Shown piece by piece: positions 56,703 to 64,000 of a DNA stretch of 64,000 bases. The notes below the pieces were generated by a model. It worked only from the letters and a program-made list of their open reading frames with translations, searched no databases and had not been told where the DNA came from. The position numbers and the translations under genes are program-made. Position 1 is the first letter of the stretch; every line of letters begins with the position of its first letter. This DNA is from Rebecca billardiae RCC1528. Taxonomy: Eukaryota > Protista > Haptophyta. Where the stretch lies: assembly GCA_965240325.2 (NCBI GenBank), contig OZ251223.1:4030001-4094000 (forward strand). The letters are read 5' to 3'.

Positions 56703-59028
56703 TCAGTCGTGGAAGCGCTCGCAGAACGTTTTGTGGTGCCACCTGAACTCCTCGACGGCTGCCTGGAGCGCGCTGGTGGAGGGCAGGAAGGTGGTGCGGA
56801 AGCCAACGCGCCCCTCCGCCTGGTGCAAATGCGCGCGGCGCGAGCGAGTCGCGCGTCAGAGGCGAGTGCGCGGCGCGAGCGCGGCGGGTGACGCGAGTCG
56901 CTCGCGGGGCGGCGGCCCACCTGGCCAAAGCCCGAGGCGGGCACGACGCACACGCCCGTCGTCTCGAGCAGCGACATGGCGTAGAGGCAGTCGACGCTCA
57001 TCCCGCGCTCGGCCGCCGCCTCCCACGCGCGCTCGGGCACCTCCACCGCGGGGAACGCGTACATGCTCCCCTTGGCCTCGTTGCACGTGAAGCCGTCGAT
57101 CGAGTTGAGGCCCTGGACCAGCAGCTTGGACTTGTGCGCGAGCGAGTGCCTGATCTCGCCGACCTCGGCGGCGTACTGCTCGAAGGAGGCGTCGCCGGGC
57201 TGCGGCGGGCGGACCATGAGCGACGTGAGCGCCTGCCCCGGCACGGCCGAGCACAGCCCCGACGAGGCCAGCTTGAAGAGCTGCGACTGCACGTAAGGGT
57301 CCTGTGTGCCGTGTGAGGGGCCGTGTGCGCGCGCACGGGACGCGCGCGGCGGCGCACACCGGTCGCGCGGCGCGGGGGCGGGTGAGCGGCGCGGCGCGGC
57401 GCCGGCCCCGCGCGGCGGCGGCGCGCAGCCGAGCGCCCTCCCTCGCGCCCTCCCTCGCGCGCGCGCGCACGATGTTGTGCAGCTCCATGTACCCGCCCCT
57501 GCGGCCGCACTCGCCGATGAAGCCCTTGGAGGTGCTGTGGAAGGAGACGAGTTCGAGCGAGGACGCCTCCGCGCCCATCTCGATCGCGACCTTGCGCGCG
57601 GAGAGGAAGCTCGCGTCGTCGGCGTACACGTTCTCCTGGTACACCTCGTCCGCGAGCAGCACGAGCCGCTCGCGCACGCAGAATCGGATCACGTCCTGCA
57701 GCGTGCTCCGGCCGAACACCTGGCCGGTCGGGTTGCCCGGGTTGATGATCACGCACGCGCGCGGCGCCTTGCCGAGCGCGCGCGCGTCGTCGACGGCGGA
57801 CTGCAGCCGCTCCGGCGTGATCGCCCAGTCGCGCTTCTCGTCGAGCTGGTACCCCGCCTGGTACGCGCCGAGCAGCGAGAGCATGCCTGCGTGCGCGCAC
57901 CCACGCACCGCGCGCGCGGCGCGCGCGCGCGAGGGGAGCGTGTCGCGAGCCGAGCGCGCGGCGGTCGCGGCGCGGCGGTCGCGGCGGCATGGCGCGGCGG
58001 GCTGCGCACCGGAGTAGATGGGGTACTGCGGGATGGGCACGAGCACGGCGTCGTCGTCGGTGCTGATCACCGCGGTGAGCAGCATCTGGATCGCCGCGCT
58101 CGCGCCGTTGGTGAGGAAGAGGTGGTCTGGGGAGACCGCGTGGCCGTCGCGCGCGCTGATGAAGTCGGCCACGTCCTGCCGGAAGCCGAGGATGCCCTGG
58201 GTGTGCGTGTACGCGCCCGTGCCGCCGGTGCCCATCATCTCGTGCATCTCCCGCGCGCGCTCGATCGCGTCCGACGGGAAGAGCTGCGACGCCATCGGAT
58301 GGTCGATGCCGTACTGCGGCGGCAGGTCGCACAGCGCAAGCACCTGCGGCGCATGCACACGGGGCGGAGGGCGGCGCCACCAGCGCGCGGCGCGTGAGAT
58401 GGCCGCGTGCCACGCCGCGGTGCACGGTGCTCGGTGGCTCGTGCGCGGGCCCGCGCGCGCGCGCGCACGTCCGCGCGCACGGCCCGCGCTCGCCGCCGCC
58501 GCGCACCTGCCGGAAGAACGTGATGGGCGTCTGGCCGACCGCCTGCGGGTTGCCATTGTGCGCGTACGTGATCTCGGAGAAGGGCAGCGGGTCGCCGGCG
58601 AGCAGCTGCGCCTCGATCTCCTCGGCGCGAACAAGCACCTCACCGCGCACGGCGTACTCCATCTGCCGCAGCTTCTGCGACATTGTGAACTCGTTGAGCG
58701 CGCGCGGGCGCTCCTTGGCGGGCGGATGCGGGTGCGCGTCCTCCTCGAGCTGTGCCTGCGCGCGGCGCTCGAGCTCGTCCCAGTCGATCTCGTCGACCGA
58801 GCTCGCCGCCACGGCGGTGCTCTGATGCCTGTCCCATGCGGGGGAGAGGCTCACCGGACGTCGGCTCCCTCGCGCAGGGAGCGCGCTCGCCGTGCGCAGC
58901 GCGCGCACGCCAACGCGCGCGGCGATGGACGATCCAAGCGCGAGCGCCTGTGGCGCAGCGACCACCGAGTGGAGCGCGCGCGCGGCGATGCCCGACGAGT
59001 AGATCGTGGACGAGATTGCCGAGGTCAT
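56703..59028 (-). CDS. Alanine (glutamate:glyoxylate-type) aminotransferase with presequence; introns 58506-58344, 58009-57887, 57470-57302, 56920-56820
   Basis: MEYAVRG, NGNPQAVGQTPITFFRQV, VPIPQYPIYS, INPGNPTGQ, ADEVYQEN, PLP-lysine motif SFHSTSKGFIGECGRRGGY, SGFGQ, FRTTFLP. Confidence 0.95.
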
Positions 59029-61410
59029 GGTCTTGAGTGCGCGTGTGTCAGCGCGGAGCGTTCGGGAACGTGAGAGAGGGCCGAGCGGGGGAAGTCGGCG
59101 CGATTGCGGCCGTCGCCGTCGTCGGCTTGCTTTGATTGTGCAGTTGGACACTTGGACTTTCCACTTTTTCCTTCCACTTCGTGACTTCGCGGTTCGGCAG
59201 GGCAAAACTGAGACATATCTTCTTGGCTTCGTCGGCCAATCACGTCGGCGGCCTTGCTGAAGTAGTAGTAGTAGTATGGGAACAAATAACCAATGGTCGT
59301 GCACCTGCTCGAGTCCAGGGCTAGATTTGCTCTAACCAAATTCGTCGTTTGCTTGCCGTTGGGAGTGTTTTGAGCAGTCCTCTCATCCTCAAAAAGTGTC
59401 GAATCGATTCGCGCATTTGCTCCGGAACGAATGTTTGGTTCCTTCCGCTTTGTTTGGTTCCGGATCCCCCTGCGTGGTGGTCGAACAATGGAGCGTCGGC
59501 AACCCAACCACCCCGCGGTCGCTGCAACTCAGACTGGCGGTCCGTCGTCAGGCGATAACGGGCCACGCCATGTCGTTCACTGGTGTCGTCCCCAAGATGT
59601 ACACACCCGCGCTGTCCCGGAGCCGATAACCATTCGATTGAGTCCGAAGACATTGAAAGCGTTGCCCGAGTACTTCACTCAGAATTGAGCAGCGCGGCCC
59701 TGCGATGCAGATATCTGCTGATGCATTGTCAAAAGCCTGTGGTGGCAGTCGCGTTGTGCGTTGTGGCAAGGGCTCGATAGCATTCACTCAGTTCGTATTT
59801 CCGACGGTGACTTAGCCACCGCGGGCACCGAGCCTCTCGGAACCTGCGGCCTGTAGGCCGGCAGCCTCGGAGGCAGCCTGCGTGCCGGTCCGTCCACTCT
59901 AGTGCCAGTCCTCCGTGAGAATGTGGCCCAGAGCGGCCGCACTTGCGCCGAAAACCCCCTCCCCCTTCGCTCCACCCCGCCACCAGACAAAGACGCGGTG
60001 GTGCGCACGCGTCGACGCAAGACGGAGCATTGGGCTTCCGCTCGGTGATCGGCGTTCGGACGACTGTCGACCAGTGCGAGGAGCGCTGGTCCTGTCGTCA
60101 GTTCGTCCCTGCTAACTGCGATCTGCTGCAGCTGCCTGACTCTGACGCCTGCCCGTTGCATGCCACGACGTTGCATACATACGCGATATACAGTTCGACC
60201 CAGACTCGCCCATGGGCGATCAATTCTGACGACGAGGAGGCGCAGCTGAGTCAGACGAGGGCAAAGCGAGTTCCCTGCCAGCCGCAGCACCGCTAGCCGC
60301 CGCCAGCCAGCCAGCCGAGCAGAGCGGCAAGCGCGCATTGCGACCGCGCAGAGCACGCATGGACGGCCGCATCACCGCAGGACCAACCGCCAGGGCCCAG
60401 CGGCTGAGACGGCCGTCTGGCAGTGGCATTCGGTCCCGGCTGACTCCTGCACCCTCGCCCCTTGACTAGGTACTGCCAGACTAGGGCGCAGCAGGCCCAT
60501 GCCGGAGCTGCGCAGCGCGGGTGGATCGCGCTGGAGCAGCTCAAGACGCGCTTGAGCTAAATTTTCGGAAATATTTTTCGATCGCGGTGCAGACAGGGGC
60601 TCTGCCACCAACGCCGACTACGGTGTCGACGATGGCCACTGGCACTCCGCACTGCGGGCCGACAAATCACAGGAGACCTGCGACCGGCCGTCTAGCCATA
60701 CTGTTTCGGTGTCGGCTGTCGCCGTCGCGCGGTGTCAGTGTCACCCGTGTCTGATCAGACGTGACGACTCGTCACGTTGTCGTTATTATATATATCACCT
60801 TGAAAAAACGCCACCAGCGTTCGCGGCCACATTGAGAAGTTTTTCACGGCTCATTGATCGACGCTAAGCAAGATCCACCATTAAGGCAGGTCGGCCAAGG
60901 GAATCACGTCCATCGATACGCGACCAATCAACAGGCTCCATTCGATTTACTCATGATTCCGGCGAGGCTGGTAATGCGGGTAGATGAAATGGCGCTGTCT
61001 GATTGGTCAGCCGTTTGCTATCATTCCTTCGCGGCATCCAATCATCTGCAACTCTGAAACGAAGAACAGGGCCCATCAGGTCTCTTTTCGGGTGCTCGGT
61101 AGATCGAAAGCGGGCGCTCGCCCCTCCGAGCGAGCGAGGCTCACCATCCACCTGCGCCGGCGGGCGGCTGGGCCACGCATCGCGTGAGGTCGTGCAGCCG
61201 TTGCGTTGCCCTGCTGTGGGCATGTGCTGCCTGGGCTGCGGCAGATCAGCACTAAGTGCTTCAGCCTGCCACGCAAGTGCTCCTCCTTGACACCGTCTCC
61301 GGGTCCGTGGAAGTCATGCGCGCCGGCCCCGCTGCCGTAGAGGACGAAGTGCTTTGACAGTTCAAGTTGCTGCTGGCCCAATATCGCTCTGAAGTCATCA
61401 ACGACATCGT

Positions 61411-61414
<4 letters not shown>

Positions 61415-61458
<44 letters not shown>

Positions 61459-61498
61459 AGAGAGAGAGAGAGAGAGTAATAAGAGAGAGAGAGAGAGC

Positions 61499-61541
<43 letters not shown>

Positions 61542-61545
61542 GAGA
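61415..61545. repeat. Interrupted (GA)n microsatellite
   Basis: GA run with several interruptions. Confidence 0.95.
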
Positions 61546-61983
61546 GGCATCCATGACCATTCGGAGGAATGAGGATTGATTGAGGTCCTCCCGGCTGTGC
61601 ACGGTTTTCACGAGTCATGAAGTTCATCATGTCCGAACTACGACAGCAGACTGTTTAGAGTGTACACATCATCAGTACACTAGCTGCTCACGTCAGACAG
61701 TACTCAGTAGTGATGCCCGTCTCATGACTATGATGAGTCCGATCACTCCGATGGGCTCATGCCCCATGGCCATGGGCCCGCCGTCGGACTGGCGTGAGGC
61801 GGGGGTCCGCGCCGCACCCGTAACTCCTATGAGACGAACCGCGGAAGCCAGATCAGATGATGAGCCCTATATATATATATGCACTAATACCTGTAGGGCG
61901 ACATCACATTTATTATGCAGTAGACTGAATGTTTATAACGTCGACGATCCGCCGACGCTGACGATGCGCGTCACAGGCGGCGC

Positions 61984-64000
61984 TTATTTGCGCAGCGCTG
62001 CGCGCACGAGCACAAGGCCGAGAGCGCCGGCGAGGGCGCATGCGATCGGCACGATCGGCACGCCGTCGAAGAGACCGGGCGGCTTCGGCAGCTCGCCGAT
62101 CTTGAACTTGGAGAGGATCTTCTCCGCGTTGTCCGAGTGACCGACCTCCTCGTATGCCTGCGGCGCGCAGACGCCAGCCGGTGGCGAGGGGGGGCGGGGT
62201 TCGAGTGAGGACGGGCGGGCGGCGCGACGCAGGCGTGTGGCGCGGGCGAGCTGGCCCGCACCTCAGTCGCATCGGTGCCGACGACGCCCATGATCGACTC
62301 GGGCCCTCCCGGATGCTCCTTCATGTACGATGCCGGGATCTTATAGACGTTGCCGCGGATCGCGAGCCATGCGTCATTCTGCGCACGCGGCGGCACGTGT
62401 CGGCGGCGAGGGGGGCAGGTGAGCACAGGGCGCGAGCGCCAGGGCAGCGATGCATCGCTCGCTCGCAGAAGGGCGCTCGCGCACGCGCGCTCACCGCGTC
62501 GGTGTGCTTGGCGACCTCCTCGAGCTCGATCGGCCCGTCCACCACGGGCATGCTGTCCGGCTGCCGCTCCGGCGCCGAGGCCCCGCCGCTCTTTGCGATG
62601 TCGTTCATCGACGAGCCCTGCGCGAGTTTGCCCTGCGACGCGGACGACGTCATGCCCGGGTTTGGCGAGCTGCCGGCCAGGTTGTTGGACGACGAGTTGC
62701 GGTTCAGCTGCAGGCCCGAGGCGATGCGACGCATGCCGGCGATGAGCGGCGAGGGCGACGCCGCCGCCGCCTTCTCCGTCTCCATCCACCCGCCCGGCAG
62801 CTTGCCCGGCTGCGTCGGGTGCTCGAACGTGAGCTGCGACACAACGCCGCGCGCGTACGTGCGGTGGATCTTGACGCGGAAGATCGGGTTGTTGAGCATG
62901 CCCATCACGTTCCAGGTGAGGTGGTTCGGCTGCGTGTTCATGTGCGAGTCCCACGCGCGGCAGCAGATCTCTTTCGCGCCGAGCAGCCGCGAGACGGACA
63001 CGTCGAACGACCAGAGGCAGTGGCACCAGTACCGGCCGTACTCGGTGGGCGTCTCGGGGTGCTCCACCTTGCCGCCCTCCCACGACACGCCGCCGTCGAG
63101 CGAGATCTCCGCGCGGATCACCTTCTTGCCGCCGCCCGAGTAGGCGTAGCCGCGGATGGTGTACACCTCGCCGGCGACCGAGTCCGGCGTGATCGGCATC
63201 ACCTCGTCGTGCGCCGGGCTCTCCATCGCCGAGTTGATGTTGAGCTCGTTGATGATGTAGTCGGGCTTGTACCACCAGCCCTCGGCCGTCGCCGACTCGG
63301 GCGTGACGCCGACCGGCAGCACGCGGTTGTCCATGAAGTGGTAGTGGTTGTCCGACTCGGCCTCGGCGACCTCGATGTGCGTGAGCCACTTGATCATGCG
63401 CCCGCCGATGTACCCCGGGATGATGATGCGCACCGGGTAGCCGTGGTCGGGCAGCAGCGTCTTGCCGTTCTGCTCCCACGCGACCATGATCTCGTTCGCC
63501 GGGTCGAGCACCTTGTGCAGCGGGACCGACGTGCCGTAAGAGCCGTCCTCGCCCTTGGGGAGCTCGCCCTTCGGGCCGCGGAAGCGCACGTGCAGCTTGC
63601 CCTCGGGGTCGTCCTTGACGCCCGCCGCGCGCAGCACCTCGCTCAGCAGGCAGCCGCCCCACACGGTCGTCGCCCACGCCGTCGGGCCCCACGAGAAGCC
63701 GATCGTCTGCTTGACCATGTTCTGCTCCTTGCGCCGGTTGCCCGCGCAGACGAGCAGGACGGGGATCTGGCGGAAGGGCATCTGCTGCAGCTCCGCCATC
63801 GAGAACTGCCGCGGCTTGTCGACCAGGCCCTCCACGTCGATGCGCCACTCGTCCCACACCTTCTGCTTGGCCTCGTCGGTCGGGATCTTGACGGGCACGG
63901 CGCCGTGGTTGCGGACGTAGTGGAGCTGCGGCGGGCAAATGAAGCCCTGCTTCATGCACAGCGTCAGCGGCGGCTCGCAGTTGAACGGGTGCAGGCCGGT
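61984..64000 (-). CDS. NIA: Eukaryotic nitrate reductase-like protein (5' end outside window): Moco, dimerisation, hinge 1, cytochrome b5, C-terminal TM anchor; introns 62494-62379, 62261-62158
   Basis: HPFNCEPPL, HYVRNHG, LVCAGNRRKEQN, PDHGYPVR, GGRMIKWL, RGYAYSGGG, WNVMGMLNN, FEHPTQPG..GGWM. The b5 domain has HPGG and GHS. Stop TAA at 61986-61984. Confidence 0.92.

What the first reader, a model, noticed from the sequence alone, without database searches (positions are those of the whole stretch)
61984..64000. Tail-anchored 'half' nitrate reductase lacking the FAD/NAD(P)H domain
Seen in sequence: an intact NR-type Moco and dimerisation region (CAGNRRKE, FEHPTQPG..GGWM) splices through canonical introns into a cytochrome b5 domain with both heme His motifs (HPGG, GHS). 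The last exon reads ...KFKIGELPKPPGLFDGVPIVPIACALAGALGLVLVRAALRK*, a ~20-residue hydrophobic helix with a short basic tail. I see no b5-reductase motifs (RxYT, GGTGITP, CGP) between this stop and the next gene. Established: eukaryotic assimilatory NR is a soluble Moco-b5-FAD polypeptide, whereas microsomal and outer-mitochondrial cytochrome b5 end in this kind of tail-anchor. Inference: a split, membrane-bound nitrate (or nitrite-to-NO) reducing system that takes electrons in trans from a separate membrane b5 reductase, analogous to the mARC/CYB5/CYB5R chain.
Basis: partly seen in the sequence, partly recalled or inferred. Interest (0 to 1): 0.9.

Follow-up and report, generated by a model that had tools for sequence, protein, structure and literature searches.

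The report
Membrane-anchored nitrate reductase without flavin domain
This haptophyte alga and its relatives in the order Pavlovales encode a nitrate reductase that has lost the built-in NAD(P)H/FAD module found in all textbook eukaryotic versions and instead ends in a membrane anchor, so it probably receives electrons from a separate reductase.

Summary
On the minus strand, 64000..61984 (the 5' end lies beyond the window), three exons with clean GT..AG introns encode an NR-type Moco domain, a dimerisation domain, a long hinge, a cytochrome b5 domain and a 20-residue hydrophobic C-terminal segment followed by RAALRK and a stop.

- **No FAD/NAD(P)H domain.** None is coded anywhere in the 64-kb window, or next to five orthologous genomic copies.
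- **Not an artefact.** Eight Pavlovales-type sequences share the architecture, among them Diacronema lutheri and Pavlovales sp. CCMP2436. Spliced transcripts from two species end in the same tail, a stop and a 3' UTR. The tail is under purifying selection.
- **Origin.** The clade nests inside five-domain NRs, so the reductase module was lost secondarily. The b5 domain is NR-derived, not captured from a free b5 gene.
- **Function.** The residues that separate NR from sulfite oxidase are in the NR state. In D. lutheri, two NarK/NRT2 transporter genes lie 4-9 kb away.

Not shown: the membrane it sits in, the electron donor (a separate b5 reductase is inferred) and whether a canonical NR coexists; none was found. 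I found no description in the searched literature.

Verdict: a real, conserved new variant of eukaryotic NR.

The parts
62495..64000 (-). Exon A (partial; 5' end beyond the window): Moco domain, dimerisation domain, hinge, first 13 residues of the b5 domain
   Evidence: Open frame, GT donor at 62494; Pfam hits; 75% identity to D. lutheri P0002
63341..63859 (-). Molybdopterin-binding domain (PF00174), with Mo-ligand Cys in CAGNRRKE at 63725-63748 and YVRNHG at 63902-63919 just upstream
   Evidence: E 1e-51; alignment to Pichia NR 2BIH; coordinates
62861..63259 (-). Mo-co dimerisation domain (PF03404). NR-state substrate-pocket residues: Asn in FMDNRVLP (63314-63337, between the two domains) and Met-x-Met in WNVMGMLNN (62888-62914)
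62534..62860 (-). Long hinge 1 (~110 aa, low complexity) with the conserved GMRRIASG / LKR[IV]AS motif at 62714-62737
   Evidence: low pLDDT in the model of the orthologue
62379..62494 (-). Intron 1 (116 nt, GTGAGC...GCGCAG), phase 0
   Evidence: same position as the first intron shown by D. lutheri transcript-to-genome mapping
62262..62378 (-). Exon B (117 nt): core of the b5 domain with first heme ligand, HPGG at 62304-62315
   Evidence: (Cyt-b5 E 1.5e-10)
62158..62261 (-). Intron 2 (104 nt, GTGCGG...GCCGCAG)
61984..62157 (-). Exon C: end of b5 (second heme ligand in VGHS, 62134-62145), linker PKPPGLFD, hydrophobic segment, basic tail, TAA stop (61984-61986)
62005..62064 (-). Predicted tail-anchor transmembrane segment GVPIVPIACALAGALGLVLV (20 aa, mean Kyte-Doolittle 2.31)
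   Evidence: In orthologues P0123 and P0002 the C-terminal segment is the only 19-aa window above 1.6 in the whole protein. Conserved in 8 orthologues
61987..62004 (-). Short basic C-terminal segment RAALRK (net +3)
   Evidence: net +3 or +4 in all eight orthologues
59029..61983 (.). Downstream region up to the next minus-strand gene: lower GC (56-64%), (GA)n microsatellites at ~61417-61540, no FAD/NAD-binding coding potential

Best explanation
The gene encodes a functional, homodimeric, NR-type molybdoenzyme of about 663 residues. It keeps the Moco, dimerisation and cytochrome b5 domains of eukaryotic assimilatory nitrate reductase but has secondarily lost the C-terminal FAD/NAD(P)H (b5-reductase) module. 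In its place, at the position of hinge 2, it has a C-terminal tail anchor. The catalytic domains face the cytosol and are tethered to an endomembrane (ER/outermost plastid membrane or mitochondrial outer membrane; undetermined). Nitrate is reduced at Mo with electrons that reach the b5 heme in trans from a separate reductase. The most likely donor is a membrane-bound NADH-cytochrome b5 reductase, as in the mARC/CYB5/CYB5R chain. It is probably the nitrate-assimilation NR of Pavlovales. Shown: architecture, conservation, transcription, NR-state active site, derivation from five-domain NRs, NRT2 neighbours in D. lutheri. Inferred: membrane insertion and location, donor identity, physiological role.
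For: Domains and splice model. No FAD/NAD coding in the 64-kb window or in five orthologous genomic loci, including 10 kb downstream in D. lutheri. Eight orthologues all end in a 19-20 aa uncharged segment (14 aa in L007) plus a tail of net +3/+4. Spliced transcripts: D. lutheri L003/L004 carry the 666-aa ORF with a stop and at least 217 nt of 3' UTR, and map to the genome as three exons; L001/P0123 shows the same in a second species. Purifying selection: median dN/dS 0.10 on the b5 end and 0.34 on linker+TM+tail. No N-terminal hydrophobic signal, and in P0123 and P0002 the C-terminal segment is the only hydrophobic window above 1.6. NR-state residues: Mo-ligand Cys, Arg, Asn of DNR, Met-x-Met, invariant across 35 NRs; best PDB hit is Pichia NR at E 8e-93 against sulfite oxidase at 8e-63. 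Phylogeny: half-NR clade 100/100, sister to Chrysophaeum-type five-domain NRs (96/91), and that pair sister to P0008+P0131 (100/99). The b5 domain is closest to the b5 of sister-clade NRs (64 bits). Two tandem NarK/NRT2 genes lie 4-9 kb from the D. lutheri copy (TIGR00886, E 1.7e-67). Pavlova sp. CCMP459 has NRT2 and Fd-NiR transcripts in the alignments of PMC6400420. No Pavlovales-labelled canonical NR appeared in two wide searches.
Against: There is no RNA or read evidence for this genome itself; none was listed. Absence of a canonical NR in Pavlovales rests on top-120 lists and length windows, not on a genome-wide search. No donor reductase was identified: the search for an NR-type stand-alone FAD/NAD protein returned none labelled Pavlovales. 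AlphaFold2 gave the tail pLDDT below 50 and no helix, which is uninformative rather than contrary. No NRT2 or NiR lies in this window. The hydrophobic segment is Ala/Gly-rich and only moderately hydrophobic.
Confidence: 0.6

Rival explanations
1. Accessory enzyme rather than the assimilatory NR. Pavlovales also have a canonical soluble NR that I did not see, and this membrane-bound paralogue does something else, such as nitrite-to-NO production, reduction of another N-oxide, or nitrate sensing and redox signalling at a membrane.
For: It does not group with the prymnesiophyte haptophyte NR clade, so an orthologue of that clade could exist. The searches only list the top 120 hits and have length limits. 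No nitrate-pathway gene lies in this window.
Against: No Pavlovales-labelled five-domain NR appeared, although prymnesiophyte NRs of similar expected score were listed. All its close relatives in the tree are NRs and the active-site residues are fully NR-like. NRT2 genes lie next to the D. lutheri copy.
Confidence: 0.2
2. The C-terminal hydrophobic stretch is not a membrane anchor. The protein would be a soluble FAD-less NR, and the tail would serve as a docking or oligomerisation helix for a soluble reductase partner, or as a degron.
For: The segment is Ala/Gly/Pro-rich with moderate hydropathy (about 2.0-2.3). The L007 orthologue has only a 14-residue uncharged run. AlphaFold2 did not model a helix.
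Against: Length, position (ending 6-11 residues before the C-terminus), flanking positive charges and lack of an N-terminal signal all match tail-anchored proteins, free cytochrome b5 included. Hydrophobic character is conserved while the sequence drifts (dN/dS 0.34).
Confidence: 0.1
3. Annotation or assembly artefact: the FAD/NAD exons exist but are missing from the assembly, lie far downstream, or are joined by trans-splicing; or the b5-TM exons belong to a neighbouring free cytochrome b5 gene.
For: The window cuts off the 5' end, and no reads could be laid on this genome.
Against: The same three-exon structure and tail occur in six independent assemblies. Intron-free transcripts from two species run from Moco through b5 into the tail, a stop and a UTR. 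No FAD/NAD sequence lies in the ~62 kb of window beyond the gene's 3' end. The b5 domain is most similar to sister-clade NR b5 domains.
Confidence: 0.03
4. It runs oxidatively like animal sulfite oxidase, with Moco oxidising a substrate, b5 passing electrons to an acceptor, and no reductase needed.
For: Moco plus b5 without a flavin is the cofactor set of animal sulfite oxidase.
Against: The domain order is NR-like, with b5 C-terminal. The positions that separate SO from NR are in the NR state. It is phylogenetically nested in NRs, and it scores 315 bits to NR against 216 to SO.
Confidence: 0.04

Closest known systems
Canonical eukaryotic assimilatory nitrate reductase (EUKNR; Moco-dimer-b5-FAD-NAD(P)H, soluble homodimer)
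   Same: Moco, dimerisation and b5 domains in the same order; Mo-ligand Cys, Arg, Asn and Met pocket residues; nested inside the EUKNR tree; about 50-61% identity over Moco+dimer.
   Different: No FAD_binding_6 or NAD_binding_1 module. Hinge 2 is replaced by a short linker, a ~20-aa hydrophobic segment and a basic tail. One residue more between the two heme histidines (VGHS, as in free b5). Very long hinge 1.
mARC / cytochrome b5 type B / NADH-cytochrome b5 reductase three-component system of the mitochondrial outer membrane (reviewed in PMC10637980)
   Same: A working analogy: a membrane-tethered molybdoenzyme reducing an N-oxygenated substrate with electrons passed NADH -> CYB5R (FAD) -> b5 heme -> Mo, with a tail-anchored b5. 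The best PDB match of the b5+tail query is rat outer-membrane b5 (57.6 bits).
   Different: mARC is a MOSC-family enzyme, not sulfite-oxidase family. There b5 is a separate polypeptide; here b5 and the Mo domain are one chain and only the flavoprotein would be separate. Localisation is not tested here.
Tail-anchored cytochrome b5 (microsomal and outer-mitochondrial isoforms)
   Same: A b5 fold followed by a short linker, one C-terminal TMD and a few polar or basic residues; His-His spacing and the VGHS motif.
   Different: The b5 here descends from an NR heme domain (closest to sister NR b5, 64 bits) and carries about 540 residues of molybdoenzyme upstream.
Ichthyosporean chimeric putative NR (CS-pNR; Moco-dimer-b5 fused to NAD(P)H-NiR reductase domains), PMC6400420
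   Same: A precedent that the EUKNR reductase module can be replaced while Moco-dimer-b5 is kept.
   Different: There a different flavin reductase is fused in cis. Here no reductase is fused and a membrane anchor is added.
Raphidophyte NR2-2/2HbN (PMC6128913) and the globin-NR fusion P0121 seen here
   Same: Lineage-specific remodelling of algal NR by domain gain. P0008/P0121 belongs to the five-domain group next to the half-NR plus Chrysophaeum-type pair.
   Different: Those keep all five NR domains and add a haemoglobin; this one loses two domains.
Plasma-membrane-bound NR activity of plant roots and Chlorella (biochemical entity cited e.g. in PMC10535175; reported as GPI-anchored, from my own recollection)
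   Same: NR activity associated with a membrane.
   Different: A GPI anchor needs an N-terminal signal peptide, which is absent here. The organisms differ, and I am not aware of a gene assigned to that activity, so no sequence comparison is possible.

Membership tests
Eukaryotic assimilatory nitrate reductase (EUKNR) | Sulfite-oxidase-family Moco domain (PF00174) with Mo-ligand cysteine | tested here: met
   (E 1e-51); CAGNRRKE at 63725-63748; aligned to Pichia NR 2BIH
Eukaryotic assimilatory nitrate reductase (EUKNR) | Mo-co dimerisation domain (PF03404) | tested here: met
   (E 2.2e-45)
Eukaryotic assimilatory nitrate reductase (EUKNR) | Nitrate-pocket residues that separate NR from sulfite oxidase (Asn in DNR; Met in WNV-M-G-M; conserved Arg residues) | tested here: met
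   These columns are invariant across 35 NRs, half-NRs included. The engineered chicken SO chain 3R19 shows N and M-x-M at the same columns; its identity as the nitrate-reducing mutant is my recollection.
Eukaryotic assimilatory nitrate reductase (EUKNR) | Central cytochrome b5 heme domain with two His ligands | tested here: met
   HPGG and VGHS; PF00173 E 1.5e-10 on exon B and about 1e-19 on full orthologues
Eukaryotic assimilatory nitrate reductase (EUKNR) | C-terminal FAD_binding_6 + NAD_binding_1 (cytochrome b5 reductase) module in the same chain | tested here: not met
   absent from the protein, the window, the transcripts and five orthologous loci
Eukaryotic assimilatory nitrate reductase (EUKNR) | Phylogenetic placement within the EUKNR clade | tested here: met
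   (nested among five-domain NRs; support 96/91 and 100/99). The tree is unrooted, with no sulfite oxidase outgroup.
Eukaryotic assimilatory nitrate reductase (EUKNR) | NAD(P)H-dependent nitrate reduction; nitrate-induced expression | not testable with these tools
   No RNA runs were listed. Indirect only: NRT2 neighbours in D. lutheri.
Tail-anchored membrane protein | Single hydrophobic segment of ~20 aa ending within ~10-30 residues of the C-terminus | tested here: met
   a 20-aa segment, 6 residues before the stop; the same in 8 orthologues
Tail-anchored membrane protein | No N-terminal signal peptide and no other TM segment | tested here: met
   maximum 12-aa hydropathy below 1.0 in the first 70 aa of five proteins of the clade (P0001 and four orthologues). 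In P0123 and P0002 no other 19-aa window exceeds 1.6. The window's own N-terminus is taken from P0001.
Tail-anchored membrane protein | Post-translational membrane insertion and defined target membrane | not testable with these tools
   Moderate hydropathy plus a net +3/+4 tail resembles outer-mitochondrial or plastid-envelope TA signals (my recollection of the b5 isoform literature). Not tested.
Sulfite oxidase (animal type, b5-Moco-dimer) | N-terminal b5; Tyr/Arg sulfite-pocket residues | tested here: not met
   b5 is C-terminal and the pocket is in the NR state. 216 bits to SO against 315 to NR.

The most novel reading that the evidence does not exclude
The tail-anchored, FAD-less enzyme is the only nitrate reductase of the whole order Pavlovales. 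If so, primary nitrate assimilation in these algae runs through a membrane-bound two-component chain (separate flavoprotein reductase -> b5-Moco enzyme). That would be the first natural eukaryotic NR that is not a self-contained NAD(P)H enzyme. It may be sited on the outermost plastid/ER membrane or the mitochondrial outer membrane so as to channel nitrite. A distant contig (L011/P0395) hints that the same solution arose independently elsewhere.
Probability: 0.45. Interest if true: 0.8.

Novelty: new variant of a known kind. Interest (0 to 1): 0.7.

Why it matters
Eukaryotic assimilatory NR is a textbook example of a self-sufficient multi-redox-centre enzyme (NAD(P)H -> FAD -> heme -> Mo in one chain), and surveys of the pathway treat that five-domain architecture as defining.

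A whole algal order that keeps only the Mo-heme half, and bolts it to a membrane, would show three things:
- The flavin module is dispensable in vivo.
- Nitrate reduction can be wired to a shared membrane b5-reductase pool, which links it to lipid-desaturation redox supply.
- NR can be localised to a membrane, which matters for nitrite channelling and for NO production.

There are practical consequences as well. Standard soluble NADH:NR assays and domain-based annotation pipelines may misjudge or miss NR in these organisms. Several database gene models for this family are truncated or mis-spliced. Pavlovales such as Diacronema lutheri are aquaculture and lipid-biotechnology strains grown on nitrate.

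Tried and rejected
1. RNA or read evidence for this genome: the look-up of sequencing runs listed no run.
2. A hidden FAD/NAD domain in the window or in orthologous loci: none.
3. A P0121-type long NR in Pavlovales that the length window would have hidden: the search with P0121 returned no Pavlovales-labelled protein. This is inconclusive because only the top 120 are listed.
4. A gene-fission partner (stand-alone NR-type FAD/NAD protein): the top hits were fragments of P0008-like NRs and generic CYB5Rs, none labelled Pavlovales.
5. Capture of a free tail-anchored b5 gene: rejected, because the b5 is closest to sister-clade NR b5 (64 bits against 57.6 for rat OM b5).
6. AlphaFold2 on orthologue P0123: the domains were confident but the tail was uninformative. 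No fold search was run.
7. Nitrate gene cluster in this window, or synteny with D. lutheri: none.
8. Other FAD-less candidates from the exhaustive search. P0363 ends in Illumina adapter and is an artefact. P0371 (Chromosphaera) stops at the end of b5, possibly a truncated model. For P0365 no contig could be retrieved.
9. Homology of the hinge LKR[IV]AS motif to the plant NR regulatory serine: the alignment does not place them in the same columns.
10. Pfam on two pieces of the downstream neighbour gave nothing, probably because of frame or intron problems.
11. Literature: five full-text searches and four papers checked gave no description of this architecture. The EUKNR MMETSP alignment of PMC6400420 was not among the searchable files, so absence of Pavlova from it cannot be claimed.
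Full report
**What is there**

The feature lies on the minus strand, and the window end cuts off the first ~65 codons. A three-exon model with canonical GT..AG introns in phase gives a 598-residue partial protein:
- exon A: 64000..62495
- intron 1: 62494..62379
- exon B: 62378..62262
- intron 2: 62261..62158
- exon C: 62157..61984, with TAA at 61986..61984

Pfam finds Oxidored_molyb (E 1e-51) and Mo-co_dimer (E 2e-45) on exon A, and Cyt-b5 (E 1.5e-10) on the 39-residue exon B alone. The database protein P0001, 100% identical to the window's exon A, reads through intron 1 but supplies the missing N-terminus. That puts the full length at about 663 residues.

**The missing reductase module**

Six full-length five-domain NRs were searched by tblastn against the whole window. 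They matched only the Moco, dimer and b5 parts; nothing beyond E 0.3 matched their FAD/NAD portions on either strand. The ~3 kb between the stop and the next minus-strand gene is lower-GC sequence with (GA)n repeats and no long conserved ORF.

**It is real and conserved**

The nearest database relatives (73-84% identity) all lack FAD/NAD domains in their precomputed Pfam. They include Diacronema lutheri KFE25_009894 (P0002, 666 aa) and a Pavlovales sp. CCMP2436 protein (P0005). Every five-domain NR is at most 61% identical. So the organism is a Pavlovales haptophyte, in line with other notes of this scan.

P0002, P0005 and P0123 end in the same kind of tail. For five further genomic copies (L002, L006-L009) I located the b5 exon pair and read the terminal exon through to its stop. 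All have an AG acceptor and the hydrophobic tail, and none has an FAD/NAD match in its flanks, including 10 kb downstream in D. lutheri and ~5 kb in L007.

Across eight orthologues:
- The tail has a 19-20-residue uncharged segment (14 in L007) with mean Kyte-Doolittle of about 1.8-2.3.
- It starts with a conserved VPxxPIAC motif.
- It is followed by 6-11 residues of net charge +3 or +4.

**Transcripts**

No sequencing run was listed for this genome, so the splice model here rests on orthology. In D. lutheri, two JGI contigs (L003, L004) carry the 666-aa ORF uninterrupted with a 34-nt leader, a stop and at least 217 nt of 3' UTR. They map onto the PacBio genome (L002) as three blocks, with two introns at the same positions as in the window. 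A second species gives the intron-free L001/P0123 with the same ending.

**Selection**

Pairwise Nei-Gojobori dN/dS over seven DNA sequences has a median of 0.10 for the end of b5 and 0.34 for linker+TM+tail. This is noisy, because the segments are short and dS is near saturation. It still fits a coding segment constrained mainly for hydrophobicity and charge.

**Topology criteria**

In P0123 and P0002 the C-terminal segment is the only 19-residue window with hydropathy above 1.6. The first 70 residues of five proteins of the clade (P0001 and four orthologues) never exceed 1.0 in 12-residue windows. There is thus no signal peptide, no bipartite plastid signal and no basis for a GPI anchor. This is the definition of a tail-anchored protein with the bulk in the cytosol. 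AlphaFold2 modelled the three domains well but left the tail at pLDDT below 50, which is uninformative.

**Is it a nitrate reductase?**

The best solved relative is Pichia angusta NR (E 8e-93, 315 bits); sulfite oxidases score about 216 bits. The Mo-ligand Cys, the Arg residues, the Asn of DNR and the Met-x-Met of WNVMGM are present. They fall in columns that are invariant or nearly invariant across 35 NRs. The b5 domain has both heme histidines.

**Origin**

In a quick tree of 118 sequences and a careful tree of 46:
- The half-NR clade has 100/100 support.
- It is sister to a clade of five-domain NRs that includes Chrysophaeum taylorii (96/91).
- That pair is sister to P0008+P0131 (100/99).
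- It is separate from the prymnesiophyte haptophyte NR clade (100/100).

All near relatives have five domains, so the FAD/NAD module was lost. The trees are unrooted, but this inference does not depend on the root.

The b5 domain scores highest against the b5 of a P0008-like NR fragment (P0224, 64 bits), with shared EEVAKHT and AYxKDHPGGxDSI strings. Free rat outer-membrane b5 scores 57.6 bits. So the b5 was inherited within NR and not captured from a free b5 gene. It has gained one residue (VGHS) that gives it the His-His spacing of free b5.

**Context bearing on function**

In D. lutheri, two tandem genes 4-9 kb downstream match the NarK/NRT2 nitrate/nitrite transporter family (TIGR00886, E 1.7e-67 for a 399-aa piece). 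Nitrate-pathway clustering is a known theme (PMC6400420). The window itself holds no NRT2 and shares nothing else with that locus. Pavlova sp. CCMP459 contributes NRT2 and Fd-NiR sequences to the alignments of PMC6400420, so Pavlovales have the rest of the pathway.

Two wide protein searches returned no Pavlovales-labelled five-domain NR, although prymnesiophyte NRs of the expected score range were listed. The length ranges were 276-878 aa and 618-1965 aa. This suggests, but does not prove, that the half-NR is the only NR.

**Mechanism proposed**

Without a flavin domain, the b5 heme must be reduced in trans. The simplest donor is a membrane-bound NADH-cytochrome b5 reductase, which these PUFA-rich algae are expected to have for their b5-dependent desaturases (general knowledge). 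NADPH-P450 reductase is an alternative. I looked for a fission product, a stand-alone NR-type FAD/NAD protein, and found none attributable to Pavlovales. The working analogy is the mARC/CYB5B/CYB5R3 chain, except that here b5 and the Mo enzyme are one polypeptide.

The moderate hydropathy and the basic tail resemble outer-mitochondrial or plastid-envelope tail-anchor signals more than ER ones. That is my recollection of the b5-isoform literature and was not tested.

**Distribution elsewhere**

An exhaustive HMMER search of 1.84 billion representatives, followed by a scan of all 490 fetched proteins for a b5 followed closely by a C-terminus, found the hydrophobic-tail form only in the Pavlovales clade, with one exception.

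The exception is P0395, a 971-aa intronless ORF on a 6.3-kb, 44%-GC JGI metagenome contig (L011). It has Moco-dimer-b5, no FAD/NAD in 2.5 kb downstream, and a hydrophobic extreme C-terminus. It sits on a long branch far from Pavlovales. It may be an independent case, but it rests on a single contig.

Other short candidates were artefacts or unresolvable.

**Literature**

Five full-text searches and targeted reading found no description of a FAD-less or tail-anchored eukaryotic NR. The closest precedents are the ichthyosporean chimeric NR (PMC6400420) and the raphidophyte NR-haemoglobin fusions (PMC6128913). The library lacks most subscription journals, so prior mention cannot be excluded.

**Verdict**

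- The trans-donor and membrane location remain inference.
- Novelty: a new variant of a known enzyme family.
- Interest is fairly high, because it contradicts a defining feature of eukaryotic NR and is directly testable in a culturable alga.

Noticed in passing
P0121 / P0008 (locus L005, JGI sample 3300017252): P0008 (61% identical, the most similar five-domain NR) and P0131 form the outgroup to the half-NR plus Chrysophaeum-type pair in the tree. In its long form (P0121, 1123 aa, MMETSP transcript) it is a fusion: N-terminal classical globin (PF00042, E 5e-22), then a hydrophobic stretch (~res 178-225), then a complete five-domain NR. This differs from the raphidophyte NR with an inserted truncated haemoglobin. 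Organism unknown.
   Followed up: partly
P0131 (951 aa, ENA contig of 505 kb): The sister of P0008 in the tree is a five-domain NR whose N-terminus begins with a hydrophobic segment (MTLAAVLSGIAGAATLHVI...). It may be an N-terminally anchored NR, which would suggest membrane association is a theme in this NR subclade.
   Followed up: no
L011:815-3730 (P0395; JGI metagenome 3300002099): An unrelated 44%-GC organism encodes an intronless 971-aa protein: a 300-aa N-terminal extension, Moco-dimer-b5, and ~70 aa ending in a hydrophobic extreme C-terminus. No FAD/NAD lies within 2.5 kb downstream. It may be an independent origin of the same architecture.
   Followed up: partly
L002:16395-22053 (D. 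lutheri JAGTXO010000012.1): A ~3-kb unit holding a NarK/NRT2-type transporter gene and a TYRAAT1_C-domain gene is tandemly duplicated, 4-10 kb downstream of the half-NR gene.
   Followed up: partly
window 62714-62737 and orthologues: The long hinge between the dimer and b5 domains carries a conserved basophilic motif L-K/R-R-[IV]-A-S (GMRRIASG here). It resembles a CDPK/SnRK-type phosphorylation site but lacks the +2 Pro of the plant NR 14-3-3 site, and it does not align column-for-column with the plant motif.
   Followed up: partly
window 61417-61540: Long interrupted (GA)n/(AG)n microsatellite about 450 bp downstream of the stop codon, inside a ~3-kb lower-GC (56-64%) region that contrasts with 70-79% GC in the neighbouring genes.
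   Followed up: no
window ~57000-59028, minus strand: The next gene downstream starts at the ATG at 59028 and has at least one intron near 58340-58505. Its N-terminal part contains ...MEYAVRGEV...ITYAHNGNPQAVGQTPITFFRQV, which I recognise as alanine-aminotransferase-like. Pfam on two crude pieces gave no hit, so this is unverified.
   Followed up: partly
L010 (Logan SRR29236927 contig), last 22 bases: The contig ends in Illumina adapter sequence that was translated into the C-terminus of database protein P0363. The apparent FAD-less NR there is an assembly artefact.
   Followed up: yes
Database gene models P0001, P0003, P0004, P0005, P0006, P0127, P0130: Most public models of this family are wrong at the 3' end: they read through introns or skip exon B (P0005). 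This hides the b5 and/or tail and probably explains why the architecture has gone unnoticed.
   Followed up: yes
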